NCBI GenBank assembly: GCA_002794465.1
Contig: MTSL01000075.1
Location: forward strand, 1 to 22,046
Length of the DNA: 22,046 nucleotides
Source of the DNA: Paramicrosporidium saccamoebae KSL3
Lineage: Eukaryota; Fungi; Cryptomycota
Reading direction: 5' to 3'
The position numbers and the translations under genes were made by a program. The notes below the pieces were generated by a model. The model ran no database searches. It was not told where the DNA came from and saw only the letters and a list, made by a program, of their open reading frames with translations. Positions 1 to 18,333 of the stretch are shown here, piece after piece (the first letter of the stretch is position 1; each line of letters begins with the position of its first letter).

Positions 1-63
1 CCGCCTTTGTGGTGATTCTCCATGAGATATGATAGAAATTACCAAGCTACAGAGAATAAAGGT

Positions 64-636
64 TTAGTCATCAGAGGGGGGCATCTCCTCTTCAATATAT
101 TTTATCAGTTTGACTTTGATTTCAGTCATGGTCAAGGTTGAATTCAGCAATGGATCACTAACGATGGAACATTCTACTAACATGTTCACCATTTCCAATG
201 CACCGCGGATCACACCACACAGAATGTTTGCATAATGTAGACCGCCCTTGACTGCCAACTCGGGCAGTTCCACCATTTCCCCACCTAATCCGTCATTCTC
301 CATACTGATTGTCCATTCTCGACCATCACCCTCCACGGTCACCCCCAGGTTTAGGAATTGTCGGAACGCCACTCGCACCATCTCTCCGCATTCCCGAAAG
401 TCATTGCATCGAAGGGGCGTGCGGGCCAGGAACTCGTCAATCAGACGACAGCCCAGAGAATGTCCCAGCTTGTCCAGATGTTGGTTTACGGCTGCCGGGT
501 CTGTATGGTCCGCTAGCAGCTGCGCAACAAGTGCGCCATATGTGAGCGTGAAAAGGTCACCATTCACCTTGTCACTTCGCTTCCATGCATCCTCTCCCAA
601 CTGTTTCCAATTCTTACTGCTTCCCGAACTCATCAT
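64..636 (-). CDS. BET3: TRAPP complex subunit Bet3 (TRAPPC3), 190 aa; start could be the second ATG at 633
   Basis: Recognisable Bet3 segments: KVNGDLFTLTYGALVAQLL, DKLGHSLGCRLIDEFLA, RCNDFRE (position of the palmitoylated Cys), YANILCGVIRGALEMV, TEIKVKLIKYIEEEMP. Confidence 0.93.
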   Translation of the reverse strand: MMSSGSSKNWKQLGEDAWKRSDKVNGDLFTLTYGALVAQLLADHTDPAAVNQHLDKLGHSLGCRLIDEFLARTPLRCNDFRECGEMVRVAFRQFLNLGVTVEGDGREWTISMENDGLGGEMVELPELAVKGGLHYANILCGVIRGALEMVNMLVECSIVSDPLLNSTLTMTEIKVKLIKYIEEEMPPSDD

Positions 637-747
637 TATTTGTAGTTATGTTACGAATATTCAATTCTGCCATAATGGTTTACCGATGTAAAGAAATGTC
701 AATTAGACCTGTATGTCCACAGACTCGAATCCATTTCAACTCAACCC

Positions 748-844
748 AATCCAAGTTGATCCAACCTATAAATCCAAGTTGGTACAACCTATAAATCCAA
801 GTTGATCCAACCTACAAATCCAAGTCGATCCAACTTACTAATCC
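748..844. repeat. Tandem array, 4 copies of a 23-bp unit (consensus AATCCAAGTTGATCCAACCTATA) plus a partial fifth copy
   Basis: Units start at 748, 771, 794 and 817, each differing from consensus by 0-3 substitutions; AATCC partial at 840. Confidence 0.92.
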
Positions 845-880
845 CCTATATCGCCTACACTTGGCTAACCATACGCATGT

Positions 881-2744
881 TTATGATACAAAACTATGAC
901 CATTGCCATTCTTCAATAAATTTACAAATTGTGGGAAATGACTCAGCTTCTTCTTCAGCTCTGACGGCAGTTGCTGGTCAATGTCAAGCCATGACTGCGA
1001 TCCCTCCTGTCGACGATCGTAAAAGGCTACTCGATTGCGTCGCCCATCAATTAATACCGTTTGGCCATCGGTAAATAGAAGAAGGAATTGCTCCGCGGGA
1101 GATGCTAGACACCAGCCCACATTGGGGAGATATGTCTTGTACGCATACTCGAATGAACGATCGGCCGAGGGGACGCGCGGAGACATGGATGCCATCGACG
1201 TGGAAATGAGTGTACTGATTTGAGGTGCCGTAATCTCGCCTGCATGGGTAGTGCTCTCACGAATAACATATGGAAATGGATGGCATTCCCTTTTCCCCGC
1301 TATCCGCAGTGCTGTCTCACAACACTGTCTGTAGCGAGTCAGACACTCACTAACCACCAATCGGTCTTGGATTGGCGTAATCCGCTCTACCAACAATTCC
1401 TCTATCCTCCTCTCACTGCCATCCGTCCTCCTCAGAACCATCACCCCATTTGATGGAAAATAGTCTACCCGCAATCCTGTATTATATCGGATCTGGAAAT
1501 CATGTGGAGCCGGATTACACATAAGAAAGGCCTTGAGAGTGTCGGCAACAAGCGCTATCTGGGGCGTCTTTGATCGCACCAAACTCACAAATCTCCGTCC
1601 ATACTCATATCTCGCAGATAAGCGAGACGGCATCTCGGCATATCCAACTTGTTCCCTGGGATAGGAATCTTGGTTCCACGGCTTCCGGTAGAGATTAAGC
1701 ACTTTTCCGTCTTGGGAAATGACCAAGACGTCCTCTTCGCTGGTAAAATCAACTGCTAATCGGCCATCAGAAAGTATTTGGACCCATCCATGCCGCGTCC
1801 TCTGTTGTATTGCCTTGCACTGCAGTGTGTTCAGCGGCTCTTTGCTAAAGCGCGGCACTGGCGGCTTCAGGAACGAATGTCTCCTAATCTGCTCCAGCGA
1901 CAATCTCCGTGACGGCTCCAGTACAATCATCCGACCAATCAAGTCCCTCGCCTCGGCGGAAACTCTGTCTGGAATCTGAAATTCTCCCCTACTTACGCGC
2001 GCAAATGTGTCCCTGAGATCGGAGCTCTCAAAGGGTGGTCGACCCACAATCATTGTGTACAACAGACATCCCAACGACCAAATGTCGGCAGCCTTTCCGT
2101 AGGGCCGCTTCAGGATCACCTCGGGGGCCAAATAATTGGGCGTGCCGCACAATGTCTGTTGTTCGCAGTCCCGATTCTCCTCAATCTTTACTGCCAATCC
2201 AAAATCAGCAATTTTCTAAACATTATAAGACGTCGATGAGGTGATACCGGCGTCAGGTCATCAGTCAGCAAAATATTGGACAACTTTAAATCACGATGAA
2301 TAATTCCATGCGAATGAAGGTAGGTGACACCATCCACAATTGCGCAAAATATCCGCCTCACATCTCCCTCTGTTAATTTGGGGCCTCTCCTCACCCGCTG
2401 GTAAAGCTCTCCGCTGGCCAATTCCATCACCAGAAAAACGTGTTCAGCGTCTTCGAAAAAATGCAGCAACTCTAGGACATTTCCATGACGTAGTTGGTAG
2501 TGTATGGCCACTTCGTTGCGGACACGGAGGGAGAGATTGTGGAGACGGATGGTGGACTTGTCCAGCGCTTTGATCGCAACCCGTCGACCAGACACTTGCG
2601 CCTCAAAGACAGTGCCAAATGCACCCTTTCCTATTTGTGCAACGACAGTGTAGTCCTAGCAACATGAAATACCCCACGAATGTGCACCTCTATATGGCTG
2701 GGATAAGAAAAGGGTGCGTCTAAACTGGACCTATTAACCAGCAT
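881..2744 (-). CDS. PLK4: Polo-like kinase 4 (PLK4/SAK)-type kinase, about 599 aa; exons 2744-2688, 2655-2248, 2215-881
   Basis: Two 32-nt GT-AG introns (2687-2656, 2247-2216) join the ORFs into MLVNRSSLDAPFSYPSHIE|DYTVVAQIGKGAFG...HRDLKLSNILLTDDLTP|KIADFGLA...TLCGTPNYLAPE. The C-terminus has cryptic polo-box motifs (LNTLQCKAIQQRTRHGWVQIL; RYEYGRRFVSLVRSKTPQI) and a PB3-like PNVGW...LLFTDGQTVLI, which are typical of PLK4 rather than PLK1/Cdc5. Confidence 0.88.
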
Positions 2745-2886
2745 AACAAAAATGGCGCCAATTTCATCTTATCCCTTCTTATAAAAACTATGCAGACGGA
2801 CCTGCATCTCTTTTAGAGTGGTCATCTATTAGAATTGTTGTGCAGGATATATTCAGCTCGGGTCAGCATGACCGGGATGTGCCGGC
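2745..2886. promoter_or_regulatory. 142-bp divergent promoter region between PLK4 and dolichol kinase, with TATA-like TATAAAAA at 2780-2787
   Basis: Position between head-to-head start codons; AT-rich; TATA-like element on the + strand. Confidence 0.45.
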
Positions 2887-4326
2887 ATGCAGGTCAGTCG
2901 TAGTCACGTCTACAACACTCACAAGATTCCAGCTGTCATCATGGGATGTTTGTTCCTCACATACCAGCTGCAAGCTTTTTTATCACATATCTACACGGGG
3001 TGGAAGGACGCGGCATTAGTGATAGTGTCGCTCACATTTGACTGGGTGGAGGCTGATGAGCCGTTGCCCTTCCTAGGCGACCGCCTCCGGCCCAAGGTTT
3101 CCAGCAGCGCTGGTACAGCCATATCCCTCCTTCTGCTCTTTTCCAAACTTGCAGGTCTTTCTGTAGACTCGGCAATAAGGTCACAATTGACAATCATGCT
3201 ATGTTCCGTGCTTCTTCTTCGATACCGAACCTGGATGACTATTTGCGTCCTGCCAGTGTCGCTTTTCCTTATCAACGCAGCAACATTTCAGGACATCCTA
3301 CCAACAGTGATATTGTTTTGGTTGATATGGCGGCTTCCCAGGGCGTTTTCTGTGGGAGAGGGAATTATTTGCTCTATGCTCATATTCCATGCGGCAGTCT
3401 ACTCTGCATATTTTGTCACTTCTAATACGTCATCTCAATTGACAAGGATTGCAGCGGTAGGAGTTGTTAGTACACTTGCAATCCTAGGTCTACTCTCTCT
3501 AACCGCGAGACGAGTTTCGCCAATCGTGTTCTCTTCTTTATTGATGCTGTCTGGGGGATCCCTTTTGTATCGGTTCGTACAGATCGATAGACTGCTTAAA
3601 GAAGTTGTAGTTTCATCGAGGATTAGCATTTCTCTACGTTGGACGGGATTGCTGTTGTGCATCATCACGTCGACTTCACTGTTTCTAAGTTTTTTCAAAA
3701 CTCCCACACCTTTTCAGCACCAACTTTTGAGGAAATTTTACCATCTCATGGCAGTCATCATGTTCATCCCTCCCCTGATCCATGATGTTGACTGGCTTCG
3801 CTTTGGTCTTGCGATGGCTGCTTGCGTGTTCATTCTGAGCGAGACATTTCGTTTATTCTGCTGTAGCGCCGATTCTCATTTAACGCGAGTGATGAATACG
3901 TTTAGAAATGGATTGGACTCGGGTAATGCCGTACTATCGCATCTTTGGCTACTTTTGGGCTGCGCTATCCCGGTGTTTGCGGTACGGGACACTTGGGAAC
4001 CATCTGCAGCGGCTTCCGGAATCCTTTCTTTGGGAATTCTGGATTCTGCCGCTGCCATATTTGGAATGGGCTTTGGCAAGACACGCTGGCCCGGTAGGGA
4101 AAAGACCATAATGGGCAGCTTTTCCGGGATATTGGCCTATGTAGCTGTGCAATATCTTGTATTCTCGTTACACTCTTTACGAAATCCGGCTACAAACATT
4201 GTGCCATGGTTTATCCAGGGCGTCATATGTGCTGCTTGGGAGGCAATTTCCGACCAGAATGACAATATCACCTTGCCACTGGTTGCGTATATTAGTTGTG
4301 CTCTTATTCCCGCTGTAGATAGCTAG
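2887..4326 (+). CDS. SEC59: Dolichol kinase (Sec59/DOLK), multi-pass membrane protein, 479 aa; 5' end uncertain
   Basis: Hydrophobic throughout, with DOLK/cytidylyltransferase-family motifs: LLRKFYHLMAV, LSHLWLLLGCAIP, GILSLGILDSAAAIFG-x-x-FGKTRWPGREKT-x-x-GS, QNDNITLPL. Confidence 0.87.
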   Translation: MQVSRSHVYNTHKIPAVIMGCLFLTYQLQAFLSHIYTGWKDAALVIVSLTFDWVEADEPLPFLGDRLRPKVSSSAGTAISLLLLFSKLAGLSVDSAIRSQLTIMLCSVLLLRYRTWMTICVLPVSLFLINAATFQDILPTVILFWLIWRLPRAFSVGEGIICSMLIFHAAVYSAYFVTSNTSSQLTRIAAVGVVSTLAILGLLSLTARRVSPIVFSSLLMLSGGSLLYRFVQIDRLLKEVVVSSRISISLRWTGLLLCIITSTSLFLSFFKTPTPFQHQLLRKFYHLMAVIMFIPPLIHDVDWLRFGLAMAACVFILSETFRLFCCSADSHLTRVMNTFRNGLDSGNAVLSHLWLLLGCAIPVFAVRDTWEPSAAASGILSLGILDSAAAIFGMGFGKTRWPGREKTIMGSFSGILAYVAVQYLVFSLHSLRNPATNIVPWFIQGVICAAWEAISDQNDNITLPLVAYISCALIPAVDS

Positions 4327-4375
4327 CAGAATGTGGAGGGAGCAATGCCCATAAAAAATAAAAATTGGTTTAACC

Positions 4376-4382
4376 TGATTGG
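4376..4382. promoter_or_regulatory. CCAAT-box-like element (TGATTGG) about 52 bp upstream of the Rab11 ATG
   Basis: The same 7-mer recurs just upstream of two other start codons (16067-16073, 18306-18312). Confidence 0.4.
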
Positions 4383-4434
4383 GAAAGCGGGACACCGTGG
4401 CTCGTCGTTTGGTTGATTACAGAGCACTTGACAA

Positions 4435-5100
4435 ATGAGCGCCGAAGACGAATACGATTATCTCTTCAAAGGTAGGAATGAGTAGTGTGCGTAATCCATA
4501 GTGGTTCTCATTGGAGATTCCGGCGTTGGTAAATCCAACCTTTTGCTGCGCTTCACCAAGAACGACTTTCTCATGGAGAGCAAGTCGACGATTGGCGTGG
4601 AATTTGCAACCCGCACCCTCAAAGTCTCTGGAAAGACGGTAAAGGCGCAAATCTGGGACACGGCCGGACAGGAGCGCTACCGTGCCATCACGAGCGCCTA
4701 TTATCGCGGGGCCGTGGGAGCACTGCTTGTTTACGATATTACGAAGAAGCAGACCTTTGACAATACGGAGAGATGGCTGGGAGAGCTACGCGAACATGCG
4801 GACGACGATATTGTCATTCTGCTAGTGGGAAATAAGAGCGATTTGCGCCATATCCGGGCTGTCTCGACTGAGGAGGGTGCCTCCTTTGCTGAAAAAAATG
4901 GATTGTTCTTTATTGAGACATCCGCCCTCGATGCCACCAACGTAGACAAGGCCTTTGAGACTATTCTTTCTGAGCGCTACAAAATCATCTCGCAGCGTCA
5001 GTTGGAAGGCGCTGCAGAGCCGTCTGCAGGACCCTCCGCCGGCACCAAGATCAGCATCGCCCCACCCGCCGATGATAAGCCCAAATCGGGCTGCTGCTAA
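4435..5100 (+). CDS. RAB11: Rab11-family GTPase (Ypt31/32, Ypt3), 211 aa; exons 4435-4471, 4502-5100
   Basis: A 30-nt intron (4472-4501, GTAGGA...CATAG) gives [12 protein letters not shown]|[15 protein letters not shown]; [48 protein letters not shown]; C-terminal CC prenylation motif. Confidence 0.96.
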
Positions 5101-5124
5101 TTGAAAGTAATAAAATTTTATCTT

Positions 5125-5598
5125 ATGTCGGGACCATGGGAGCAGCGGATGAGTGCCTCAAGAGGCGTTCCATACTATTTTAACCGAGAGACGGGCGAGT
5201 CCCGGTGGGAGAAGCCGACTACGGAGATGGTAAGGGCATTCCATTTGCTGGTAAAACATTGCGGGTCGCGAAAGCCCTCGTCCTGGCGGCAAGACAAAAT
5301 TACACGCACCCTCGAAGAGGCCTTGTCCATCTTGCAAGGTATTATAACTACACGTCCCCTTATCCTAGGCTACGAGCAGGACATTAAAAGTTCTGCAGAC
5401 CCATTTGCACGTTTCAAGGAACTGGCTAGTGAATATAGCGATTGCAGCAGCGCCAAGCAGGGCGGGGATCTCGGCGAGTTTGGACGCGGTCAGATGCAAA
5501 AGGCATTTGAGGAGGCTGCCTTTGCCCTACAATTAGGCGAGATGAGTGGTCCCGTCACTACAGATTCTGGCGTGCATCTTATTTACCGACCAAAATAA
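5125..5598 (+). CDS. PIN1: Pin1/Ess1 peptidyl-prolyl isomerase (WW + parvulin), about 147 aa; exons 5125-5338, 5369-5598
   Basis: WW domain (WEQRMS...YYFN...SRWEKP); parvulin motifs [41 protein letters not shown]. Removing the in-frame 30-nt GT...CTAG segment (5339-5368) restores the canonical ILQG|YEQDIK helix. The ORF-track start at 5101 is a TTG; the ATG is at 5125. Confidence 0.94.
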
Positions 5599-5599
5599 A
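5594..5599 (+). terminator. Candidate polyadenylation signal AATAAA overlapping the Pin1 stop codon
   Basis: AA-TAA-A, with the stop TAA at 5596-5598. Confidence 0.4.
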
Positions 5600-5643
5600 A
5601 GTAGTAAGGGTATTCTGTGGTGTCCTGTGATAAAGTAGTTTGC

Positions 5644-5851
5644 GTTCAAGGACTAATAATCTTTGTTTCTAGCATGATCTGATGAAAGAGGTAAAGTTCA
5701 AGGAATAATAATCGTTATTTATAGCATGATCCGATGAAAGAGTTGACGTTCAAGGACTAGCAATCTTTGTTTCTAGCATGACCCGATGGAAGAGTTAAAG
5801 TTCAAGGAATAATAATCTTTGTTTCCAACATGATCCGACGAAAGAACTTGC
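5644..5851. repeat. Tandem array, 4 x 52 bp with alternating A/B variants (104-bp higher-order unit)
   Basis: Units start with GTTCAAGGA at 5644, 5696, 5748 and 5800; core TAATAATCTTTGTTTCTAGCATGATCCGATGAAAGAG. Copies 1 and 3 have GGACTA and end TAAA; copies 2 and 4 have GGAATA and end TTGAC/TTGC. Confidence 0.93.
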
Positions 5852-6025
5852 CCTATAAATGGCGGACGATAATTAGTAACAACAGGTCTCGTTAAGCCCG
5901 TGTGGTAATAGTTCCTATGCCGCAAGATATTGCCAGACTCCCCAATACAGTTAACACTAATACTCGCTCGTACATTATAAATCCTTTAGTGCAATCTTCA
6001 ATATCACATTAGTTATGTACTTTAA

Positions 6026-7840
6026 TTAGTCGAGACGGGTGGACGTAATACCCGGCGTGGAGCGTCGTCCCGTGTGTCCAAACACCAGCTCCTCGCCTTT
6101 ACGCCGAATCACGTGTCCCCCGTTGCCGTCAAGGGTGACGAGAATCGCAATCTGTTCCATCAGGGCTGGCTCCATGCGGTGGCCAATCGTGACGGTGGTA
6201 ATGCCTCGTTTCCAGAATTCCTCGTAAATGATCTTTTCGGTGGGCATGTCTACAGCGCTGGTGGCCTCGTCAAGGATGGCAAAATGAGGCGATTCCAGGA
6301 GCACTCGCGCAAGGACCAGCCGCTGCATTTCACCAGGCGAAAGCATCTCCATCCAGCGGGCGCGGGGCCACGACTTGCTCATTCCGCCCGTGCGGAAGGG
6401 CAGTGAGGCCAAATTCACCGCCATAAGAATGCGGCATGCTTCGTCATTGATTCCATAATCATTCTCCAAACCTAACTGTTCCAGCAGAGTTCCCGAATAG
6501 ACAATGGGCTCCTGTGGAGCACACGAGATTTTGGCATTTCCGAGCACTGCCACCCTCCCCCTTGTGGGTCTCCATAAGCGCATCAGAATGCGGACCAGTG
6601 AGGTCTTTCCCGATCCATTGGGTCCAGTAATATACACGTGATTTCCTTGCTCAATGCGCAGATCAAAGTCTTCAATGTGGCATTGCTCGTCAGGACTGAC
6701 AATGTCGAGGCCCGAAAACAGAATAGTAGGGGCCCTGATCTCGCGGTCCTGCGCCGTCTCCCATTGGCGAATATAGTCGCGTTCCTCTGCAAGTCGACAG
6801 AATTCGGCTATCCGAGAAGCGTGCGCCGTCATTGCAGTCACGTGGTTACCAATCTGAACAAAATCACTCAGCTTGCTTATCAGATAGAGCGTAGTAAAGC
6901 TGCCGTGGTTGATAAACTCGGAAATCTCGGCCGGAGTGTACAAGCTAAAGTCGGCCGTGTAGTACAGGATGGCATAATTGAGGACACCGCCCACAAAGGC
7001 AAAAAAGTTGCCAATGCAATTCATCATAAACTGCAGACTCAGCACTAGGGGCAAGTGATCGTATATCTTTGAGAAGGAGCTCTCCACGTCTTTTCGGAAT
7101 CGCGCCCCAGTCCTGCTGAGGAAGATTGGTTCGGATTCGTTTCGCACTGCGGCATGGGAGAAGCGAAAGTCACCCTCAAGATTGTCAAGATGCGCCGTGA
7201 GCTTGACCAGCTTTGGCATAACGAGACGCTGCAAGATAACCCCGACGCCAAAGAAGACATAAATGAGGATGATGGCAAGTAATCCGTTCGTCTTGTAAGC
7301 ATCTCGAGAGTAAATGACGACAAGGACGGGCGAGAGGACAAACTTTTCAATGGTGGTAATCAGAGATGCACAAAACTCGTTTACGTCGGCGGTTATCCGT
7401 TGATCAGGATTATCTACCACTTGATTCAGCCGGTAAAAGGCGCCAGCCCCAAAGTACTTGTCGTTGAGTGCCTCAGTTAGCATCGATCTCAGTAACCTCG
7501 CCAGACATCCGGTACAGTACGACTTTGCGCTAATGTACAGTGACGACATGGTCATGAACACGGTCATGGAATACAGCTGTTTGTAGAACGTCTTGCGTCT
7601 TCCCTCCACAATTAGTCGAAACAAATTTCCCGTTGCAACCCCCAAGTTCCTCGCATTACACTCCAACACTATCGACAGCACCACTAGCAGCACAAAGAAC
7701 AGCTCAATTCGCTCCGTAAACGCCGACTGTTTCCGCCTCTTCATATAGTAGCTCAGTGTCAACCAGGCGGTGAAGGCAACATTTTTGTAGTTGGTACGCC
7801 TTGAATTGACCGGTTTAATTAATTGCTCTTCGCTCCTCAT
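6026..7840 (-). CDS. ABCD4: ABC subfamily D half-transporter, ABCD4-like, about 604 aa (first in-frame ATG 7840; the ORF track starts at GTG 7873)
   Basis: TMD motifs FYRLN..VDNPDQRITADV and LEGDFRFSH; Walker A GPNGSGKTS; signature LSPGEMQRL (ABCD4-type, versus LSGGE in ABCD1-3); Walker B AILDEATSA; TIGHR. Confidence 0.82.
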   Translation of the reverse strand: MRSEEQLIKPVNSRRTNYKNVAFTAWLTLSYYMKRRKQSAFTERIELFFVLLVVLSIVLECNARNLGVATGNLFRLIVEGRRKTFYKQLYSMTVFMTMSSLYISAKSYCTGCLARLLRSMLTEALNDKYFGAGAFYRLNQVVDNPDQRITADVNEFCASLITTIEKFVLSPVLVVIYSRDAYKTNGLLAIILIYVFFGVGVILQRLVMPKLVKLTAHLDNLEGDFRFSHAAVRNESEPIFLSRTGARFRKDVESSFSKIYDHLPLVLSLQFMMNCIGNFFAFVGGVLNYAILYYTADFSLYTPAEISEFINHGSFTTLYLISKLSDFVQIGNHVTAMTAHASRIAEFCRLAEERDYIRQWETAQDREIRAPTILFSGLDIVSPDEQCHIEDFDLRIEQGNHVYITGPNGSGKTSLVRILMRLWRPTRGRVAVLGNAKISCAPQEPIVYSGTLLEQLGLENDYGINDEACRILMAVNLASLPFRTGGMSKSWPRARWMEMLSPGEMQRLVLARVLLESPHFAILDEATSAVDMPTEKIIYEEFWKRGITTVTIGHRMEPALMEQIAILVTLDGNGGHVIRRKGEELVFGHTGRRSTPGITSTRLD

Positions 7841-8020
7841 TACCGGCTGAGTTGCAAAGCGAAAATGCGACACCGCCCTGGAAATCGGAAAAGCACCGAT
7901 AATGCTCTTTTGCTATCGCCAATTATTCGTTATTGCAAGTTCCATTTTTGGTTAATGAACCTGGCTATTATATAAGCGTTAATAAAACAAAGTGACATAA
8001 AGAAGGTGGTGTAGTATTAT

Positions 8021-8137
8021 TATTAGTGTTAATGGGACTGAGAATGGACATGAGTGCAGTATTAGTGAATGCGAGTATGAGAATGCATCCAAGTGCGTTA
8101 TTGATGAATACAAGTATAAGCGAATGCATTATTAATG
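8021..8137. repeat. Degenerate tandem repeat of about 39 bp, 2-3 copies
   Basis: Copies at 8021 and 8060 match at 24/39 positions by hand count (shared TATTAGTG, TGAGAATG, AGTGC). A third copy at 8099 aligns to the second with a 2-nt offset. Confidence 0.4.
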
Positions 8138-8442
8138 AGACGTGGTTAGCCAACTCGTTGTCTGAGGTCTAATAACTTCCATTGGGCACCACGATCTGAT
8201 GGTGAGTCTTGCCCCATAAATGAAGACGATATTTAACAAAAGAAGCTCTTGCTTAAAGTGTCACGATAAGGAGTTCCTGTACGTAGGCTGTTGTATCACC
8301 ACGGGACACTTAATAATAATATCGATGAGTAAGAATGTATTTGGCAAATACTATATATATATACTAGTTAGGGATCAAATCTCCTAGGTGGTACTTACAA
8401 ACTTTACGGTATCTATGGATCAGCAATTCCATACTCTGAATG

Positions 8443-8988
8443 TTATGCTTCATTTGCGACTCCGGTCGGCATTTCATACTTGGGATGTCCAAACTGGCAC
8501 TCGGGGCCAAAGGGGCAGAATCCAGTGAGATAGAGCTGGCACGCCGTGTTCCTCACATGCTTATTTCGGCAGTTTGGCCCGTGCTTACAAAAGCCTCGTG
8601 CGTACCACTGACACTCGCGCGTTTTTGAATTCGGATCCACGTGCAGATACAGACACTCGGGGTTGCTACATTCTCCGTATTTTGTAAAAAACCAGCACTC
8701 TGGCATCTTTTTCAAGTTGTACTCGTGTAGAAATTCACATGCATCACCTTTTTTACATAAACCGCGCAGCCAGTGCTTGCAGACGACCGACTTTTCCTTT
8801 CCACGAGAAGTTGTTGAGTAGGCGTGGCGTTGAGGACAGGCGGCACCGCGAGGACACGTTCCTCGGAGGAAGAAGCGACAGAGCTCGCCAGACAGGGAGC
8901 CGTCAATATCGACACCAAGCCGCTCTTTGACAAAACGCTCAAAGTCCAGGGAAATGTTTTCCGCAGTACTTATGACAAGCTCTTCCAT
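8443..8988 (-). CDS. YTH1: CPSF30/Yth1 (CPSF4) polyadenylation factor, five CCCH zinc fingers, 181 aa
   Basis: Five C-x-C-x-C-x-H fingers, including VCKHWLRGLCKKGDACEFLHEYNLKKMPECWFF; ends GHPKYEMP; no C-terminal CCHC knuckle visible. Confidence 0.93.
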   Translation of the reverse strand: MEELVISTAENISLDFERFVKERLGVDIDGSLSGELCRFFLRGTCPRGAACPQRHAYSTTSRGKEKSVVCKHWLRGLCKKGDACEFLHEYNLKKMPECWFFTKYGECSNPECLYLHVDPNSKTRECQWYARGFCKHGPNCRNKHVRNTACQLYLTGFCPFGPECQFGHPKYEMPTGVANEA

Positions 8989-9151
8989 TGGCCCTCTTCG
9001 GACGCCCCTTGTTCAAAAGTCGTATTTGTATGGCCGGCTCGACTGACTAGTAATAGTACCAACTAGACTGGGTGAGCAACATGAATGGCTATTATAAGTG
9101 ATCCTGATACACTTTTTCAGAAGGTCAGATCCCCATTGCTGTAAAATAATC

Positions 9152-10834
9152 ATGGAACGAGCCAACTGGGGTATGAAAGGGAGGGTGAGCTTTCACGATG
9201 AAGACGACGAAGACATTACAACCATAAAGCGAAAGACACCTACTGATGCCACTACACCCAAATACACTAGACCGGCAGTCAGAAGAAACCGCGGAGTGAC
9301 CCTCACTTCAGACGTTACGCCAGTAGAGCCTATAGACTTTTCCGAAATCCAGGACCGGAACGTGGAGATAATTCTTCCACCTGAGGAAGAAGAAGAAGAG
9401 AGTGACGAAGAAATGAAGAAAAAGGTTATAAATGCTAGACAAGTAAGGGCACAACGTGTTCAAGAAGGGCTTTTGGAAGATTATATTTCACTAGAGGACA
9501 CCACACAGCGACATTTGGATGACTATGACATTGCCACCATGATTAGGCAAGACTCTGGAGATCGTAGACGGCCTCGTCAGATGTGGGAAGACCCAGAGGA
9601 TGAGCCAACGCCGGGTACTGAACCGGTAGAATCTTCCGAAGAGGAGGGGCCGCTAATAGATGACAGCCTGGACATGGAACACTTTGAAAGTCACAATCGT
9701 TCTAGCGGCCGAATCGGTATGGAGGTAGAAGAAGATTCAAAGGTGGACAAGTCGAGTATCCTAAAGATGGACTTTGAGGATGAAGAAACACGAGAATGGG
9801 AGATGCAACAGATTCGAAAAGGAGTCTCATCAGCTGGATCCATGTCAAAGGAGATGCGTAAAACTACCAGACAATTTTCACAGGGGCTGGGTGCGGTACA
9901 GTCGGAAGAAAAGATACTGATTCCATTGGTGTCAATACCGGCAATCATGTCTCGGGTCAACAAGGAGACTGCCGAAATGAATTTAGCCATCGAGAGCTGC
10001 AGGGCAATTATAGCTCAAGTTGAAGCACACCAGACGGAAAGTCAAAGGTCAAGGGCCAACTTTGATCAAATGTGCATTGCTGCCAAAGAACAAGCGGAAT
10101 TTTTTCAAAAATTGCAAAAATTCATTGATTTGTACTCTGAAATGGTGGAAGCTCTAATGCCACTCGTTAATACGCTCGAAGATGACTGGGTCACTACTCT
10201 CCGCTCAGCCGGCGCGGTGGAGGAAAGTGATGTGTTGGAACGACGAGACGAGCTACTATCAACTGTGGATGAAGAGTTTTCAACTGTAGATGGAGTCCTT
10301 GGGCGTTTACGAGAATGGAAGGTTCAATTTGGTGAATCATATGAAAAGGCCTATGTTGACGAGAGCATCCCGGGCCTGTTGGAAATGCATCTAAGGGTGC
10401 GTCTTGTCGGCTGGGACCCGTTGCTAACTCCAGGGAATGTGCATGATTTTGTTGGATTCTGTTTTGGCTCTGTTGAGCTTTCCGATTCAGCAAAGAACAA
10501 GATTTTTACGTCCATGTTTGTTCCCAGGCTGATTAATTTAATTGCAGCAAGCTATTCTCCCTTGATAACACAGAGATCAGAGGGACTGGTGGCAATTATC
10601 AGCTATTTGAAGGCCTCGCTGCCACAAACGTCGCGCATGTTCACAACCTTGAGGGGAATTATTGGAAACCTTTTCGTGGAGGCAGAATTGAAGACTGATG
10701 CTGACGCGAAAATCTTTTTGCATAGTGCTGAGATTGTGGATAACGTCTTAGAGGATGATAACCTAAGGTCAATTTCCACGACAAAGGTTAATGCGCTGAT
10801 GGTGCCCCGAGACGACTCTGTAGAAACTTTATAA
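9152..10834 (+). CDS. Ntr2/GCFC2/PAXBP1-family spliceosome disassembly factor, about 560 aa (ATG 9152; the ORF track starts at GTG 9098)
   Basis: Acidic N-terminus with INARQVRAQR...DYISL and EWEMQQIRKGV (NTR2-type motifs), a coiled-coil, then GCFC-domain-like LREWKVQFGESYEKAYVDESIPGLLEMHLRVRLVGWDPL. Confidence 0.75.
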   Translation: MERANWGMKGRVSFHDEDDEDITTIKRKTPTDATTPKYTRPAVRRNRGVTLTSDVTPVEPIDFSEIQDRNVEIILPPEEEEEESDEEMKKKVINARQVRAQRVQEGLLEDYISLEDTTQRHLDDYDIATMIRQDSGDRRRPRQMWEDPEDEPTPGTEPVESSEEEGPLIDDSLDMEHFESHNRSSGRIGMEVEEDSKVDKSSILKMDFEDEETREWEMQQIRKGVSSAGSMSKEMRKTTRQFSQGLGAVQSEEKILIPLVSIPAIMSRVNKETAEMNLAIESCRAIIAQVEAHQTESQRSRANFDQMCIAAKEQAEFFQKLQKFIDLYSEMVEALMPLVNTLEDDWVTTLRSAGAVEESDVLERRDELLSTVDEEFSTVDGVLGRLREWKVQFGESYEKAYVDESIPGLLEMHLRVRLVGWDPLLTPGNVHDFVGFCFGSVELSDSAKNKIFTSMFVPRLINLIAASYSPLITQRSEGLVAIISYLKASLPQTSRMFTTLRGIIGNLFVEAELKTDADAKIFLHSAEIVDNVLEDDNLRSISTTKVNALMVPRDDSVETL

Positions 10835-11046
10835 TTTTTGTAAATGCTTGCCTGGAAATCAATAAATGACGGTAGAGATGATTCCAGAAAACGTGATGGA
10901 GTTTGTGGTAGAACTCGGGATGAGAGTGTTGAGAACAATCAAAATGTTCCAGACTCCCCTAAATCTGGCATTCACGGCGTCCTATGATTACACTTTACTG
11001 TCCTTCTAAATGTAAGGTTTTATTACAGAGAGCACCGAACGTGTAA

Positions 11047-11598
11047 TCAGGGAGACCCTTCCTTGGAAGGGTTCCTTTTTTCAATTTCACCATGCAGTCT
11101 CGACACTTCTTCCTCAAGTGCCCGAATCCTGTGCCTTGCCTCTTTGTGCTCCTTCAATACTTGGATTACACACGCGATGACCTCTGGCATTGGACTGCCT
11201 ACAGGCGGTCTTGATTCTGGAAGTTCTGCCCGCAGACTCTCCAAGACGACGCCCCAGGCGGCGGACGGACTGCAGTTTGCGGGACACGGCGGCCGTTCTT
11301 CACGTTGTCCCAGGACGGGTCGTGGTTGTTCGCCCCCCACTGGTATGAGAATATGCGGGTATGTACGAATATTAGCTAGAATGTCATTGGAGCTTAATAA
11401 AAGTTACTTGGACGATCGCACAGCTCGGGCCGTAGTGGCGAAATGTACTCGGGGACATTGGTATCCTGCATTTAGTGACAATAAATATATGGATACTGTG
11501 GGACCGAACTGCAAAAGACTGTTTTGCCATTCAAGATTCAGGCCAAGCTCTGACAAAAAGTATTGGGAAGGGCTCTCTGATTCCTTCTTTGTGCTCAT
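11047..11598 (-). CDS. Hypothetical protein, 162 aa, C-terminal coiled coil; exons 11598-11497, 11465-11408, 11375-11047
   Basis: Two AT-rich GT-AG introns (31 nt, 11496-11466; 32 nt, 11407-11376) join separate ORF fragments into one open 489-nt frame. Heptad-like LKEHKEARHRIRALEEEVSRLHGEIEK. Confidence 0.7.
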
Positions 11599-12172
11599 CT
11601 CGAACCCAGGCTGATATAATCATTTCTTATCAGGCTTATGATAGTAGTAATATTGGTAATAGCGGCTCTTTATTGAAGTTTTAATCTGCTGATGTGATAA
11701 ACTGTGAGGTTCGCGGTAAAACCCCCGTTAAATAGTATCCGGCTACGTTTGGCAATCCTGAGGGCTATCCTGCAATCTGGTATCTTAAGGATGGCAGCCT
11801 ACAAAGACATCTCCAACAAATAAATATGCTCGCCCATCAACAGATCCACTGTCCCTGACACAAAATTACTCATTGGCATTATTCAAGATTTCTCCACACT
11901 GACATTATATGACTCCAGCTCTTGATTCACGGAACAGGGCAATTTTAAGCACTACTTGGTGTCAGTTTAGTCTGCTATGGTCCCAATGTCTTGGGGTTTA
12001 TTCCCGCCGGAAGCGTCGGAGAATCCCGGTGCTCGGACCCTGGGAGAAAGAAACTTGCCTTTTCCGTTAAGGACGCACGATGAGTTTATATTTGGCTTCA
12101 TCCTTGTGTTGGTAGCTCATAGATTTTGCAGAAATAGAGGTCACTTTGATCAGTATTCAAGTAGGTGGACAT

Positions 12173-12178
12173 TATAAA
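12173..12178 (+). promoter_or_regulatory. TATA-like element upstream of eEF1B-gamma
   Basis: TATAAA about 30 bp before the ATG at 12208. Confidence 0.4.
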
Positions 12179-12207
12179 GGACGCCACTAGCCGGGGTAAC
12201 CATAATC

Positions 12208-13448
12208 ATGACTGCCTCTACCTTGGTACACTCAGCCTCTCATAACTCATGCATCCATTCTAGAAGCTCTACGGAATTGCTAACAGCCCGAATAATAACA
12301 AAGTTGCCCTTGCCGCAAAGTACGCCAACGTGGAATACGAGTTCCAGGCTGTTGAAATGGGCGAGACCAACAAGACTCCCGAGTACCTCGCAAAGTTCCC
12401 CTGGGGAAAGATCCCCGCCATGGAGACTCCCGAGGGTACCATCTTTGAGAGCAACGCCATTGCCTTCTACGTCGCCTCCAAGAAGCCCGAGCTTGTTGGA
12501 AAGTCCACTTTGGAGCAGTCTTTGATCTTGCAGTTTATCTGCAACTTGGACTGTGAGCTTATTCCTGCCTACCAAAAGGTTTTGTACCCGCTCTTGGGAT
12601 ATATGCCTTATGGGGCTACCCAGTGGACTATGTCCTTGAAGGAGCTCTTGGCCAAGCTCAAGGTCTTTGACACGATCCTCCGTACCCGCACTTTCCTTGT
12701 TGGAGAATCCATCACTATTGCTGACCTCCTCTATGTGAGCATCCTGGCCCCTATTTACACCCACGTTTTGGATGCCTCCATGCGTAGCGATCTTGTCAAC
12801 TTGACCCGCTACTATGTCACCATGGCCAACCAGGTCAATGTTAAGGCTGTTATGGGTGAGATGAGCCTGTGCACCAAGACTGCCGACCCTTCCACGTTCA
12901 AGCCCAATGTTACTGCTGCCAGCACTGACAATGACGACGAAGAGGATGCTCCCGTTGTAAAGCCCAAGGAAAAGAACGCCATGGATCTGTTGCCACCTTC
13001 CAAGTTCAACCTTGAGGAATGGAAGCGTTTCTACTCCAACTGCAAAGAGACTCGCCCCGTCGCCACCAACTGGTTCTGGGAGCACTTTGACCGTGAGGGA
13101 TTCTCCATCTGGCGCGCCGACTACAAGTACAATGACGAGCTTAAGAAGATTTTCATGACCTGCAACTTGGTCACTGGTCTCTTTGCCCGCATGGAGTCGA
13201 TGCGCAGGTATTGCTTTGCCTCTGTGCTCATCCTTGGTGAGGACGACAAGAATGAGATTACCGGATTCTTTGTTATCAGGGGAACTGAGATGCCCGACTT
13301 GATGAAGGACGTGCCTGATTTCGAGTGCTACAACTGGACCAAGATGGACACTGAGGACAAGAAGCAGGTCGAGCTGTTCAACGATTACCTTGCCTGGGAA
13401 GGCGAGCTTGAGGGTAAGACTGTTAACCAAGGAAAGACCTTTAAGTAA
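12208..13448 (+). CDS. EEF1G: Translation elongation factor eEF1B-gamma, 400 aa; exons 12208-12225, 12264-13448
   Basis: A 38-nt intron (12226-12263) gives MTASTL|KLYG...; GST-like N-domain (AKFPWGKIPA, FESNAIAFYVA, RTFLVGESITIAD); EF1G C-domain (NLEEWKRFYSN, WFWEHFD, YKYNDEL, FMTCNLVTG, YLAWEG). Strong C/T-ending codon bias suggests high expression. Confidence 0.96.
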
Positions 13449-13527
13449 ATCTTTGAATAAATGGTTATCCCAGATCGGTACTGATCTGATCAAGTATTAG
13501 TATCTGATTATTACGTTTATTTGCAAA

Positions 13528-14541
13528 ATGACCATATTGCCGTCAGGTGGTATGCATGCTTTGCTTGACCTGGTCAAATCACACAGTCACAATAGTTTGC
13601 CGATCAACCCCACCGGAAAGGAGACAAATGTTAGGGAGCTGGAGGAAGAGCTCTTGTCAGAGAAGCTCCGTTCGGCCAGTTTGCAGGAGAAATGCGACTC
13701 GCTCACGAACAGTGTCTGGACACTGGAACATACTCTGCTGAATGCCACACAAGGCGCAGAGGTGCACACAATGTCAGAGAAGGAGTTGAGAATGGCCCTA
13801 GCGGCAGCACACGTCGACAAGGAGCAGTTGGTTACCTTGGTTGGAAAGTACCAAAAATTGGTGAATGCATATCGAAGCCAGCCCATAACAAGACGATTGA
13901 CAAGCAGTGGGACGGAAGAATTTCCCTCCTATGAGGAATCCACTACAAAATATACGACTCTGAAGGATGACGACTGGCGACGTCGTCCTAGCGGAAGTTC
14001 TTCCTATCTTTATGCGGGTGTGGAAGGACCACCAGATCCCCCGCCGTCCCTCCGTGACAGCTATGGCGGAGGAAAACTTTCCTCTGGTACAATCTCCCCC
14101 GACACTCTCCCTGTCAATACATTGCCTACAACATACATCTTGCCAGCCCTCACACAACTTCTCCGCGGCACTTGGCTCTACAAATACCCACGACGTCAAT
14201 ATGCAAAGCTCATTGCCCAACAGACAATTCCCACGGGACAGCTGAGCTATCGGTATTTTTGGCTACATCCCATGACGGCGGCGTTGATCTGGGCAGCGGC
14301 ACCGGGCGGGGAGGGTAAACAGGTCAGTGTTCTGGATTACTACACCGAGAGGAGGGGAGTGGGGGGAGAGTGTGCTACAGTGGTTGTAATATTGACCGGC
14401 GGGGAGCCATTGGCAGTGGTGCCGGCTACCAACGAAGACTTGGCTACTTGGCTGGACGGCCTCAGTTCATTAATGAAACTGAGGAGGAACAAGGCATGGC
14501 CTGAGAACTTGGCCGTTTGTGCTATTAGACACCCAATGTAG
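13528..14541 (+). CDS. Coiled-coil + Num1/Mcp5/ApsA-type PH domain protein, 337 aa
   Basis: N-terminal heptad region (VRELEEELLSEKL...LVNAYR), a Ser/Pro-rich linker, and a C-terminal TQLLRGTWLYKYPRR...RYFWLHPMTAALIWA that resembles the Num1/Mcp5 PH motif (TQTMIGEYLWKYTRK...RFFWVHPYT..LYWS). Confidence 0.65.
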   Translation: MTILPSGGMHALLDLVKSHSHNSLPINPTGKETNVRELEEELLSEKLRSASLQEKCDSLTNSVWTLEHTLLNATQGAEVHTMSEKELRMALAAAHVDKEQLVTLVGKYQKLVNAYRSQPITRRLTSSGTEEFPSYEESTTKYTTLKDDDWRRRPSGSSSYLYAGVEGPPDPPPSLRDSYGGGKLSSGTISPDTLPVNTLPTTYILPALTQLLRGTWLYKYPRRQYAKLIAQQTIPTGQLSYRYFWLHPMTAALIWAAAPGGEGKQVSVLDYYTERRGVGGECATVVVILTGGEPLAVVPATNEDLATWLDGLSSLMKLRRNKAWPENLAVCAIRHPM

Positions 14542-14576
14542 TAACAAATATAAATATCTATAAAGAGAAACTGAAA

Positions 14577-18312: not shown

Positions 18313-18333
18313 CTGCAGGGGATACATACTCAT

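What the first reader, a model, noticed from the sequence alone, without database searches (positions are those of the whole stretch)
881..2744. Minimal PLK4: kinase fused almost directly to the cryptic polo box, with no L1 linker or phosphodegron
Seen: after splicing, the kinase end (IRRHSFL) is only about 10 residues (KPPVPRFSKE) from the first cryptic polo-box motif (PLNT...), and no DSGxx(S/T) motif occurs anywhere. Established: animal PLK4 (about 970 aa) has a roughly 300-aa L1 linker holding the autophosphorylated beta-TrCP/Slimb degron that limits centriole number; PLK4 is absent from Dikarya. Inference: this roughly 599-aa kinase is controlled some other way. If the organism is a non-flagellated rozellid or early microsporidian, a centriole-duplication kinase has been kept and possibly repurposed for a non-centriolar MTOC.
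Basis: partly seen in the sequence, partly recalled or inferred. Interest (0 to 1): 0.75.

Follow-up and report, generated by a model that had tools for sequence, protein, structure and literature searches.

The report
Linker-less PLK4 kinase in Paramicrosporidium
A parasite of amoebae that has no flagellum still keeps, under strong selection, a stripped-down version of PLK4, the kinase that controls centriole copying in animals. This raises the question of what PLK4 does when no centriole is known, but related organisms carry equally short versions, so it is a lineage trait and not a one-off.

Summary
Window 881-2744 (minus strand) encodes a 599-aa protein from three exons separated by two 32-nt introns. 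It has a complete kinase domain (residues 21-271), ten residues (KPPVPRFSKE), then Plk4-type polo boxes PB1 and PB2, a short disordered stretch, and PB3. No DSG motif occurs anywhere.

The window is 100% identical to Paramicrosporidium saccamoebae KSL3 contig MTSL01000075.1. This organism is a flagellum-less rozellid, also called a short-branch microsporidian. The deposited annotation fuses this gene to the neighbouring TRAPP gene.

The gene is functional. dN/dS is 0.06 against a 93%-identical metagenomic relative, with no indels and conserved introns.

The interpretation needs correction on three points.
- **Degron:** the DSGxxT degron is missing from every non-animal PLK4 sampled, so its absence here is not special.
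- **Linker length:** it forms a continuum. Animals have about 170-510 aa, chytrids 56-180, aphelids and Ambispora 31-40, the Paramicrosporidium clade 10-26, and a syntenic environmental sister clade 5-6.
- **PLK4 in aflagellate fungi:** PLK4-like genes also persist in Basidiobolus, Smittium, Calcarisporiella, Ambispora and, weakly, Neolecta.

Whether the kinase serves an acentriolar spindle-pole organiser or a hidden centriole remnant could not be tested here.

The parts
2688..2744 (-). Exon 1 (residues 1-19, MLVNRSSLDAPFSYPSHIE)
   Evidence: The ATG is at 2744. The N-terminus aligns with relatives P0001 (MLVQ..) and P0016 (MLGNQ..). Splicing restores the conserved IEDY motif. It is 56/57 nt identical in L012.
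2656..2687 (-). Intron 1, 32 nt, GTGCAC...GCTAG
   Evidence: An in-frame TAG lies directly upstream of exon 2, so splicing is required. Position, length and GT..AG are conserved in L012.
2248..2655 (-). Exon 2 (residues 20-155: kinase N-lobe, catalytic loop HRDLKLSN)
2216..2247 (-). Intron 2, 32 nt, GTATCA...TTTAG
   Evidence: Removing it restores LTPKIADFGLA, which is conserved in all homologues. In L012 it has the same position and length but 10/32 mismatches, about the synonymous-site rate.
881..2215 (-). Exon 3 (residues 156-599 plus stop): DFG, activation loop, kinase C-lobe, junction, PB1, PB2, L2, PB3
   Evidence: A single uninterrupted ORF covers it.
1868..2652 (-). Kinase domain, residues 21-271 (spans intron 2)
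   Evidence: Pfam Pkinase 231 bits. Best PDB match is the PLK4 kinase, 231 bits. AlphaFold pLDDT is mostly above 90. dN/dS 0.05.
1838..1867 (-). Kinase-to-polo-box junction, residues 272-281 (KPPVPRFSKE), in place of the L1 linker
   Evidence: Only residues 276-278 have pLDDT below 50. The closest relatives have PPSVPLFTKS and PPPVPLF.. at this position.
1574..1837 (-). Polo box 1 of the cryptic polo box, residues 282-369
   Evidence: Pfam Plk4_PB1 42.9 bits, cut-off 26.4. PDB PLK4 CPB E 6e-10. Foldseek gives TM 0.72-0.81 to human and fly PLK4 CPB.
1262..1570 (-). Polo box 2 of the cryptic polo box, residues 371-473
   Evidence: Pfam Plk4_PB2 27.9 bits, cut-off 26.9. Fold match as for PB1. dN/dS of junction plus CPB is 0.06.
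1145..1261 (-). L2, residues 474-512: a short, mostly disordered, Ser/Thr-rich stretch (ITAPQISTLISTSMASM)
   Evidence: pLDDT is below 50 at 479-509. The motif is conserved within the Paramicrosporidium clade (sequences).
911..1144 (-). Polo box 3, residues 513-590
   Evidence: Pfam POLO_box at 535-579 scores 19.4 bits, below the cut-off of 23. phmmer aligns it to the C-terminal PB3 of chytrid and animal PLK4s. The AlphaFold model shows a six-strand plus helix polo-box topology at pLDDT about 90. dN/dS 0.05.

Best explanation
This is the functional PLK4 orthologue of Paramicrosporidium saccamoebae, in a naturally minimal form: kinase, a 10-residue tether, then PB1-PB2 (cryptic polo box), a short L2 and PB3.

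**Shown**
- The kinase has all catalytic motifs and the activation-loop threonine.
- The polo boxes are PLK4-type in both sequence and predicted fold.
- All domains are under strong purifying selection.
- The architecture is conserved across a diverse clade of relatives.
- There is no L1 linker and no recognisable degron.

**Inferred mechanism**
- As in animal PLK4, the PB1-PB2 module homodimerises and docks the kinase on a scaffold at the microtubule-organising centre.
- Each kinase domain hangs on only about 10 residues, so the two catalytic domains of a dimer are held close together. Activation-loop trans-autophosphorylation should then follow dimerisation directly.
- Two animal-type controls, L1-mediated autoinhibition and the autophosphorylated beta-TrCP/Slimb degron, cannot operate. 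Control must come from transcription, partner availability, or phosphorylation of the Ser/Thr-rich L2.

**Inferred role**
- The organism lacks the flagellar toolkit. The most likely job is therefore licensing or duplicating the nuclear-envelope spindle-pole organiser, using PB3 to bind a STIL/Ana2-like coiled-coil partner and/or recruiting gamma-tubulin complexes.
- This organiser could be the microsporidian-type spindle plaque or a small centriole-derived remnant inside it.
For: - **Gene model and junction:**
- **PLK4 identity:** kinase 231 bits to PLK4 against 191-202 for PLK1-3. Plk4_PB1 and PB2 are above Pfam cut-offs. The C-terminus alone hits only PLK4 CPB chains in the PDB. The AlphaFold model of residues 277-599 (pLDDT 85.9) matches human and fly PLK4 CPB at TM 0.72-0.81, against about 0.35 for the PLK1 PBD.
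- **Full-length model:** pLDDT 87.9, with only residues 276-278 disordered at the junction.
- **Function retained:** dN/dS is 0.059 overall (kinase 0.051, junction plus CPB 0.062, PB3 0.051). 178 of 233 differences fall at third codon positions, and there are no indels across 1800 nt against L012.
- **Clade-wide architecture:** P0001-P0006 have 10-26 aa linkers, and about 25 clusters have 5-6 aa. Both groups share microsynteny with the window (TRAPP, Rab, CCCH zinc finger, ABCD transporter, Pin1).
- **Organism:** 100% identity to MTSL01000075.1. The published genome paper rules out a flagellated stage, and its table shows 0 hits for IFT122 and ODA1/6/9 in KSL3. An independent survey reached the same view.
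- **From my own knowledge, not tested here:** PLK4 drives acentriolar microtubule nucleation in mouse oocytes and early embryos, and PLK4 assemblies act as de novo MTOCs in Xenopus extract. L1 autoinhibits fly Plk4.
Against: - No direct evidence for localisation, substrates or dimerisation.
- I could not search the P. saccamoebae genome for SAS-6, STIL/Ana2, CPAP, CEP135, CEP152/192 or beta-TrCP, so the MTOC it acts on is unknown.
- Two CPB positions that are nearly invariant elsewhere (consensus R-L in 'RLxPIxQ') are Q287 and C288 here. Scaffold binding may therefore differ.
- PB3 is below the Pfam POLO_box cut-off.
- Inter-domain geometry in the AlphaFold model is uncertain (pTM 0.61).
- Some environmental short-branch microsporidia are reported to have zoospores. 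Linker-less PLK4 in the wider clade may therefore still serve ordinary centrioles.
Confidence: 0.6

Rival explanations
1. Canonical job in a cryptic centriole. P. saccamoebae, like Basidiobolus or Coemansia, keeps a reduced centriole-like ring in its spindle-pole body without making a flagellum. PLK4 would duplicate it through the usual STIL-SAS-6 route. The short linker would be lineage-specific streamlining of a compact genome.
For: - PLK4-like genes persist in other aflagellate fungi, including Basidiobolus and the kickxellomycete Smittium. A relative of Smittium, Coemansia, has a nine-microtubule ring in its SPB according to PMC6070874.
- PB3, the STIL-binding box in animals, is conserved under dN/dS 0.05.
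- The genome is compact, with 30-32 nt introns.
- Some short-branch microsporidian lineages reportedly have zoospores.
Against: - Published surveys report no flagellum genes in P. saccamoebae. Bass et al. failed to confirm most of its flagellar hits, and found no delta/epsilon-tubulin in Mitosporidium or Amphiamblys.
- No paper in the searchable library describes centrioles in this organism.
- Ito and Bettencourt-Dias found no centriole-assembly orthologues even in Coemansia.
Confidence: 0.25
2. A role unrelated to the MTOC. The kinase has been co-opted for general cell-cycle, cytokinesis or sporogony signalling, for example partly substituting for PLK1/Cdc5. The polo boxes would then serve only as dimerisation and targeting modules.
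For: - PLK4-like genes persist in aflagellate lineages with no known centriole remnant: Glomeromycotina (Ambispora), Calcarisporiella and Neolecta. This shows PLK4 can outlive centrioles.
- The CPB consensus 'RL' is replaced by QC in this protein.
Against: - All three polo boxes and the kinase are conserved at the same low dN/dS, as expected if the ancestral partner network is intact.
- Every documented PLK4 function, canonical or acentriolar, concerns microtubule-organising structures (my own knowledge).
- Whether the genome also has a PLK1/Cdc5 was not tested.
Confidence: 0.1
3. Artefact: a mis-spliced model, a decaying relic gene, or contamination from the amoeba host or another eukaryote in the assembly.
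For: - The deposited annotation is wrong here, giving an 812-aa fusion with TRAPP.
- A PLK4-like transcript exists in an amoebozoan transcriptome, Ceratiomyxa.
Against: - The kinase-CPB junction lies inside one uninterrupted ORF.
- dN/dS is 0.06 with no frameshifts against an independent metagenomic relative.
- Gene order around PLK4 is shared with independent metagenomic contigs whose PLK4s group with this one and apart from those of animals and other fungi.
- The Rab11 gene on the same contig also has an ultrashort intron, 30 nt.
Confidence: 0.03

Closest known systems
Animal PLK4 / SAK (human PLK4, Drosophila Sak)
   Same: The domain order is the same: kinase, PB1-PB2 cryptic polo box, L2, PB3. 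The kinase domain is the best PDB match (231 bits). The CPB fold matches at TM 0.72-0.81. The catalytic motifs and activation-loop Thr are kept.
   Different: Animals have a linker of about 170-510 aa carrying DSGxxT at about residue 285-295. Here there are 10 residues and no degron. The protein is 599 aa against about 900-1000. The autoinhibition and self-destruction circuits that reside in L1 cannot exist.
Chytrid and blastoclad PLK4 (e.g. Spizellomyces, Powellomyces, Synchytrium, Paraphysoderma)
   Same: These are the best named full-length hits (45-49% identity over the kinase). They also lack the DSG degron. The proline-rich start of the post-kinase segment is similar: chytrid PSLPV.., here KPPVPRF.
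   Different: Chytrids keep 56-180 aa between the kinase and PB1 and have flagellated zoospores with centrioles.
Aphelid PLK4 (Amoeboaphelidium occidentale KAI3659895.1, A. protococcarum KAI3629703.1)
   Same: They have a short linker (31-40 aa between Pfam domain edges), no degron and the same three polo boxes. They belong to lineages with a reduced flagellum (pseudocilium) or none.
   Different: The linker is still three to four times longer. They are annotated only as hypothetical proteins.
Uncultured relatives with 5-6 aa linkers (P0016, P0029 from GCA_048222815.1, P0030 and others)
   Same: The architecture is the same or even tighter. The gene neighbourhood is shared (TRAPP, Rab, CCCH, ABCD, Pin1). 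They are 37-43% identical.
   Different: The organisms are unknown, and whether they have flagella is unknown. L2 is longer and of low complexity. Plk4_PB2 is often below the Pfam threshold.
PLK1 / Cdc5
   Same: It is a polo-family kinase domain (191 bits) with the polo-box fold in general.
   Different: There is no PLK1-type tandem polo-box domain. Only one sub-threshold POLO_box hit was found, and Foldseek TM to the PLK1 PBD is about 0.35 against 0.72-0.81 for the PLK4 CPB.

Membership tests
PLK4 (SAK/ZYG-1-type polo-like kinase) | N-terminal Ser/Thr kinase domain closer to PLK4 than to PLK1-3 or Aurora | tested here: met
   PDB phmmer gives PLK4 231 bits, PLK3 202, PLK2 192, PLK1 191 and Aurora A about 180. 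All the best named database hits are PLK4.
PLK4 (SAK/ZYG-1-type polo-like kinase) | Intact catalytic motifs (VAIK Lys, HRD, DFG, activation-loop Thr before GTPNY) | tested here: met
   VAIKAL, HRDLKLSN, DFG and QQTLCGTPNYLAPE all align with the human and chytrid motifs.
PLK4 (SAK/ZYG-1-type polo-like kinase) | Cryptic polo box made of two tandem polo boxes (PB1, PB2) | tested here: met
   Plk4_PB1 scores 42.9 bits (cut-off 26.4) and Plk4_PB2 27.9 bits (cut-off 26.9). PDB PLK4 CPB E 6e-10. The predicted fold gives TM 0.72-0.81 to 4N7V, 6N45 and 4G7N.
PLK4 (SAK/ZYG-1-type polo-like kinase) | Single C-terminal polo box (PB3) | tested here: met
   Residues 501-599 align by phmmer to the C-terminal box of chytrid and animal PLK4s. 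The AlphaFold model shows polo-box topology at pLDDT about 90. Caveat: Pfam POLO_box scores 19.4 bits, below its cut-off of 23.
PLK4 (SAK/ZYG-1-type polo-like kinase) | Long L1 linker with the autophosphorylated DSGxx(S/T) beta-TrCP/Slimb degron. This defines animal PLK4 regulation, not the family as a whole. | tested here: not met
   The tether is 10 residues and no DSG or related motif occurs. The motif is also absent from all non-animal PLK4s sampled.
PLK4 (SAK/ZYG-1-type polo-like kinase) | Acts in centriole duplication with STIL/Ana2, SAS-6 and CEP152/CEP192 | not testable with these tools
   No tool here can search the P. saccamoebae genome or proteome. The published flagellar table has a Sas-6 row that is zero in every species, including flagellates, so it is uninformative.
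PLK1 / Cdc5 subfamily | C-terminal polo-box domain of two canonical polo boxes forming a phosphopeptide-binding cleft | tested here: not met
   Only one sub-threshold POLO_box hit was found. Foldseek TM to PLK1 PBD structures is about 0.35, with rmsd above 12 A.

The most novel reading that the evidence does not exclude
In flagellum-less short-branch microsporidia, PLK4 works at an acentriolar, nuclear-envelope spindle plaque. If so, licensing MTOC duplication would be an ancestral, centriole-independent function of PLK4. It would have outlived the centriole here and, independently, in several aflagellate fungal lineages (Glomeromycotina, Zoopagomycota, Calcarisporiella, possibly Neolecta). 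The near-complete loss of L1 would mark the disposal of the autoinhibition and self-destruction circuit that counts centrioles. As a by-product, this natural 599-aa PLK4, almost free of disorder, would be a tractable full-length PLK4 for structural work.
Probability: 0.3. Interest if true: 0.8.

Novelty: new variant of a known kind. Interest (0 to 1): 0.55.

Why it matters
Reviews state that among fungi PLK4 and the centriole-assembly genes survive only in chytrids (PMC6070874). No paper in the searchable library mentions PLK4 together with Paramicrosporidium, Rozella, aphelids or Microsporidia.

Three things follow from this gene and its relatives.
- A conserved PLK4 exists in an organism whose genome has been declared unable to build a flagellum. 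That makes the question 'what does PLK4 do without centrioles?' testable in a natural system.
- The beta-TrCP degron and the long L1 appear to be animal additions and not core PLK4 features.
- A compact PLK4 with only about 40 disordered residues is an attractive target for a full-length structure. Such a structure could show how the polo boxes sit against the kinase. In animal PLK4 the roughly 300-aa disordered L1 is an obvious obstacle to this.

The gene is also mis-annotated in GenBank as a fusion with TRAPP, which may have hidden it from orthology surveys.

Tried and rejected
- **Fold search of the full-length model.** Kinase structures (Aurora, PLK1, AMPK) dominated it, so it said nothing about the polo boxes. 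I repeated it with a model of the C-terminal part only.
- **Word-indexed searches with the C-terminal region and with a C-terminal profile.** They returned only 15 and 36 proteins and missed even sequences that were in the query alignment. They cannot be used to claim that Rozella, Mitosporidium or canonical Microsporidia lack PLK4. The exhaustive search found 1150 CPB-bearing representatives but carries no names.
- **Identifying the organism behind GCA_048222815.1 / JBAMKY01 and SRR28640813.** No paper cites them. The flatworm-Mitosporidium and rozellid single-cell papers do not list them.
- **The Sas-6 row of the published flagellar gene table.** I rejected it as evidence because it is zero for all 33 species, including flagellates. 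The delta/epsilon-tubulin rows are swamped by alpha/beta-tubulin hits.
- **A first tree run with Biopython distances** timed out. I replaced it with a numpy Kimura-distance NJ tree with 100 bootstraps. Deep nodes in that tree are poorly supported, so I do not claim that the two linker-less clades are monophyletic.
- **The apparent 14-aa linker in Drosophila busckii Sak** is an artefact of a partial CPB alignment. That protein has DSGIIT at residue 293.
- **Rfam and tRNA scans of the window** found nothing.
Full report
**What is in the sequence.** The feature lies on the minus strand. Reading 2900 down to 840 and assembling exons 2744-2688, 2655-2248 and 2215-881 gives an 1800-nt CDS of 599 codons plus stop. 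Two GT..AG introns of exactly 32 nt interrupt it. The part that matters for the finding needs no splicing. One continuous ORF (881-2197) runs from just after the DFG motif through the end of the kinase, the junction, and all three polo boxes to the stop.

The kinase ends at ..IRRHSFL (L271). Ten residues follow (KPPVPRFSKE), and then PLNT.. (P282) opens the first polo box. Pfam places Pkinase at 21-271 (231 bits), Plk4_PB1 at 281-369 (42.9 bits, cut-off 26.4), Plk4_PB2 at 371-473 (27.9 bits, cut-off 26.9), and a sub-threshold POLO_box at 535-579 (19.4 bits, cut-off 23). There is no DSG tripeptide and no looser beta-TrCP-like, Fbw7-like, KEN or D-box motif.

**Is the gene model right?** Yes.
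- Splicing intron 1 removes an in-frame TAG and recreates the conserved ..IEDY.. start of the kinase.
- Splicing intron 2 recreates ..LTPKIADFGLA...
- The N-terminus MLVN.. matches MLVQ.. and MLGNQ.. in two relatives.
- A JGI metagenome contig (L012) is 86% identical in DNA across the whole gene. It has both introns at the same sites with the same 32-nt length and GT..AG ends, and no indel anywhere in the 1800-nt CDS.
- Ultrashort introns are a property of this genome. The neighbouring Rab11 gene has a 30-nt intron.

**Whose genome is it?** A protein encoded in the window (8443-8988) is found on NCBI contig MTSL01000075.1 of assembly GCA_002794465.1. Window bases 1-18988 are 100% identical to the fetched stretch of that contig. 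MTSL00000000 is the accession of the Paramicrosporidium saccamoebae KSL3 genome (Quandt et al. 2017, PMC5701793).

[quoted passage not shown] Its table shows 0 hits in the KSL3 column for IFT122 and the outer-arm dyneins ODA1, ODA6 and ODA9, where Rozella has hits. Bass et al. 2018 (PMC6282948) reached the same view and place the organism among 'short-branch Microsporidia'.

The deposited annotation merges this gene with the downstream TRAPP-subunit gene into an 812-aa model. That may explain why it has gone unnoticed.

**Is it PLK4 and not PLK1?** Against all PDB sequences the kinase scores 231 bits to human PLK4, 202 to PLK3, 192 to PLK2, 191 to PLK1 and about 180 to Aurora A. The C-terminal 328 residues alone hit only PLK4 cryptic-polo-box chains (E 6e-10 to 3e-8).

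An AlphaFold model of the full protein is confident (mean pLDDT 87.9). Disorder is limited to the N-terminal tip, residues 276-278 at the junction, residues 479-509 (L2) and the C-terminal tip. A separate model of residues 277-599 (pLDDT 85.9) matches human and Drosophila PLK4 CPB structures at ranks 1-11 (E 1e-13 to 2e-10, TM on the target 0.72-0.81).

**Is it functional?** The comparison with L012 (92.7% amino-acid identity) gives 178, 35 and 20 differences at codon positions 3, 1 and 2. Nei-Gojobori dN/dS is 0.059 overall, 0.051 for the kinase, 0.062 for the junction plus CPB, 0.054 for L2 and 0.051 for PB3. Intron 2 has diverged at about the synonymous rate (10 of 32 positions). All catalytic motifs and the activation-loop threonine are present. 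A relic or pseudogene is excluded.

**How unusual is the missing linker?** I measured the distance between the end of the kinase match and the start of the CPB match in 120 homologues and in the best hits of an exhaustive profile search. I checked key cases with Pfam coordinates.

| Group | Linker between kinase and PB1 (aa) |
|---|---|
| Animals | about 170-510 |
| Chytrids and blastoclads | 56-180 |
| Nucleariid Parvularia | 95 |
| Calcarisporiella and Smittium | about 110 |
| A choanoflagellate | 67 |
| Basidiobolus | 58 |
| Ambispora (Glomeromycotina) | about 40 |
| Aphelids Amoeboaphelidium protococcarum / A. occidentale | 40 / 31 |
| This protein | 10 |
| Its closest uncultured relatives (P0001-P0006, 49-68% identical) | 10-26 |
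| Second group of about 25 clusters from ENA, JGI, Logan and NCBI assembly GCA_048222815.1 | 5-6 |

Contigs from both uncultured groups share the window's gene neighbourhood: the TRAPP subunit, a Rab GTPase, a CCCH zinc-finger protein, a peroxisomal-type ABC transporter and Pin1. They are therefore relatives of Paramicrosporidium. In a neighbour-joining tree each group is a 100%-supported clade, separate from animals plus the nucleariid and from the remaining fungi. Deeper nodes are unresolved.

The near-absence of L1 is therefore real, but it is a lineage-wide state at the end of a continuum. It is not a peculiarity of this one gene.

**How unusual is the missing degron?** Not at all outside animals. 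DSGxxT sits 15-25 residues after the kinase in the animal PLK4s inspected: cnidarians (Hydra, Porites), a mollusc (Ostrea), Drosophila, a mammal and two unnamed animal-like sequences. It was found in none of the chytrid, blastoclad, zygomycete, glomeromycete, aphelid, nucleariid, choanoflagellate or uncultured sequences, apart from one unrelated DSGPTT near the C-terminus of Sorochytrium. On this sampling the beta-TrCP/Slimb degron looks like an animal innovation. The claim that this kinase is 'controlled some other way' is true, but it holds for all holomycotan PLK4s.

**PLK4 without flagella is not unique to this organism.** The searches also returned PLK4-like proteins with Plk4_PB1/PB2 domains from these aflagellate fungi:
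- Basidiobolus ranarum (PB1 63.7 bits, PB2 89.5 bits)
- Calcarisporiella thermophila (58 and 71.8 bits)
- Smittium mucronatum (PB1 26.5 bits)
- Ambispora gerdemannii and A. leptoticha
- Neolecta irregularis, weakly (PB1 22.3 bits, below cut-off, plus a phmmer PB3 match)

This conflicts with the review statement that PLK4 and centriole-assembly proteins are found in fungi only in chytrids (PMC6070874). No paper in the searchable library combines PLK4 with Paramicrosporidium, Rozella, aphelids or Microsporidia. The pattern appears to be unreported, though the library does not cover subscription journals.

**How it most likely works.** The following is shown: an intact, selected PLK4 with kinase, CPB and PB3, with no L1, in a genome without a flagellar toolkit.

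The following is inferred from what is established for animal PLK4 (my own knowledge: Slevin 2012 and Park 2014 for CPB dimerisation and scaffold binding; Arquint 2015, PMC4530586, for PB3-STIL; Klebba 2015 for L1 autoinhibition; Holland 2010, Guderian 2010, Cunha-Ferreira 2009 and Rogers 2009 for the degron).
- The CPB dimerises and docks on a scaffold.
- With only about 10 residues of tether, the two kinase domains of a dimer are held next to each other and next to the CPB. Trans-activation should follow dimerisation directly.
- Neither L1 autoinhibition nor autophosphorylation-triggered SCF destruction is available. Control must lie in expression, partner binding or the Ser/Thr-rich L2 (ITAPQISTLISTSMASM). 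L2 is conserved in the clade and is the only sizeable disordered segment.

The most likely target is the nuclear-envelope spindle-pole organiser, either a microsporidian-type plaque or a centriole-derived remnant within it. PLK4 can drive acentriolar microtubule nucleation in mouse oocytes and embryos and in Xenopus extract (my own knowledge: Coelho 2013, Bury 2017, Montenegro Gouveia 2018), so an acentriolar role has precedent.

I put about 0.9 on 'functional, linker-less PLK4 orthologue' and about 0.6 on the mechanism as a whole. I cannot decide between an acentriolar MTOC and a cryptic centriole remnant. None of the tools can search the P. saccamoebae genome for SAS-6, STIL/Ana2, CPAP, CEP135, CEP152/192 or beta-TrCP. 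The published table is uninformative for SAS-6, because that row is zero in every species.

**Caveats.**
- The CPB differs from the near-universal 'RLxPIxQ' consensus at two positions (Q287, C288).
- PB2 passes its Pfam threshold only narrowly, and PB3 is below threshold by Pfam.
- Inter-domain packing in the AlphaFold model is uncertain (pTM 0.61).
- The flagellar status of the uncultured relatives is unknown, and some short-branch microsporidian lineages are reported to have zoospores.
- Amoeboaphelidium strains vary between an immotile pseudocilium and no flagellum. Linker length therefore does not map cleanly onto the presence of centrioles.

**Verdict.** This is a real, selected, minimal PLK4 in a flagellum-less short-branch microsporidian, mis-annotated in the public record. 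Its novelty lies in the architecture (a new variant of a known kinase family) and in the biological question it poses. The absence of the degron is not novel, because that is the general state outside animals. The finding is of moderate to good interest to centrosome-evolution and PLK4 structure specialists.

Noticed in passing
window 64-2744 and 12330-14541 (L007 gene models): The deposited NCBI gene models fuse neighbouring genes. PLK4 is joined to the downstream TRAPP-subunit gene as one 812-aa protein. EF-1-gamma is joined to an Mcp5/Num1-type PH-domain gene as one 756-aa protein.
   Followed up: partly
window 2216-2247, 2656-2687, 4477-4506: Introns are ultrashort: 32 and 32 nt in PLK4 and 30 nt in Rab11, all GT..AG. 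This appears to be a property of the genome.
   Followed up: partly
window 748-844 and 5644-5845: Two intergenic tandem repeats. One has a 23-nt unit in about 4 copies, between the PLK4 stop codon and the TRAPP gene start. The other has a 52-nt unit in about 4 copies, downstream of the Pin1 gene.
   Followed up: no
P0012, P0025, P0157, P0277/P0159, P0085 (not in window): PLK4-like proteins with Plk4 polo-box domains occur in aflagellate fungi: Basidiobolus ranarum, Calcarisporiella thermophila, Smittium mucronatum, Ambispora spp. and, weakly, the ascomycete Neolecta irregularis. This contradicts the review statement that among fungi only chytrids keep PLK4.
   Followed up: partly
P0262 (EukProt EP01112, Ceratiomyxa fruticulosa transcriptome): A 770-aa protein with kinase, Plk4_PB1 (42 bits), Plk4_PB2 (37.6 bits) and a C-terminal polo box comes from an amoebozoan transcriptome. 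PLK4 is usually considered opisthokont-specific. Contamination is not excluded.
   Followed up: no
all non-animal PLK4 homologues: The DSGxxT beta-TrCP degron was found only in animal PLK4s. It was absent from one choanoflagellate, one nucleariid and all fungal and aphelid sequences, which suggests it arose in animals.
   Followed up: partly
window 1201-1233 (residues 484-500) and chytrid homologues: The Ser/Thr-rich L2 motif ITAPQISTLISTSMASM is conserved in the Paramicrosporidium clade. It resembles a chytrid L2 motif (S/F)HPS(S/T)MSTYT, so it may be a conserved phospho-regulatory site (sequences).
   Followed up: no
L001, L008, L010 (5-6 aa linker clade): The gene neighbourhood TRAPP, Rab, PLK4, CCCH zinc finger, ABCD transporter, Pin1 is conserved between Paramicrosporidium and distant uncultured relatives that are only 37-43% identical in PLK4. 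That is unusually stable microsynteny. A large WD40 protein with weak WDR62/IFT122-type hits sits nearby in those contigs.
   Followed up: no
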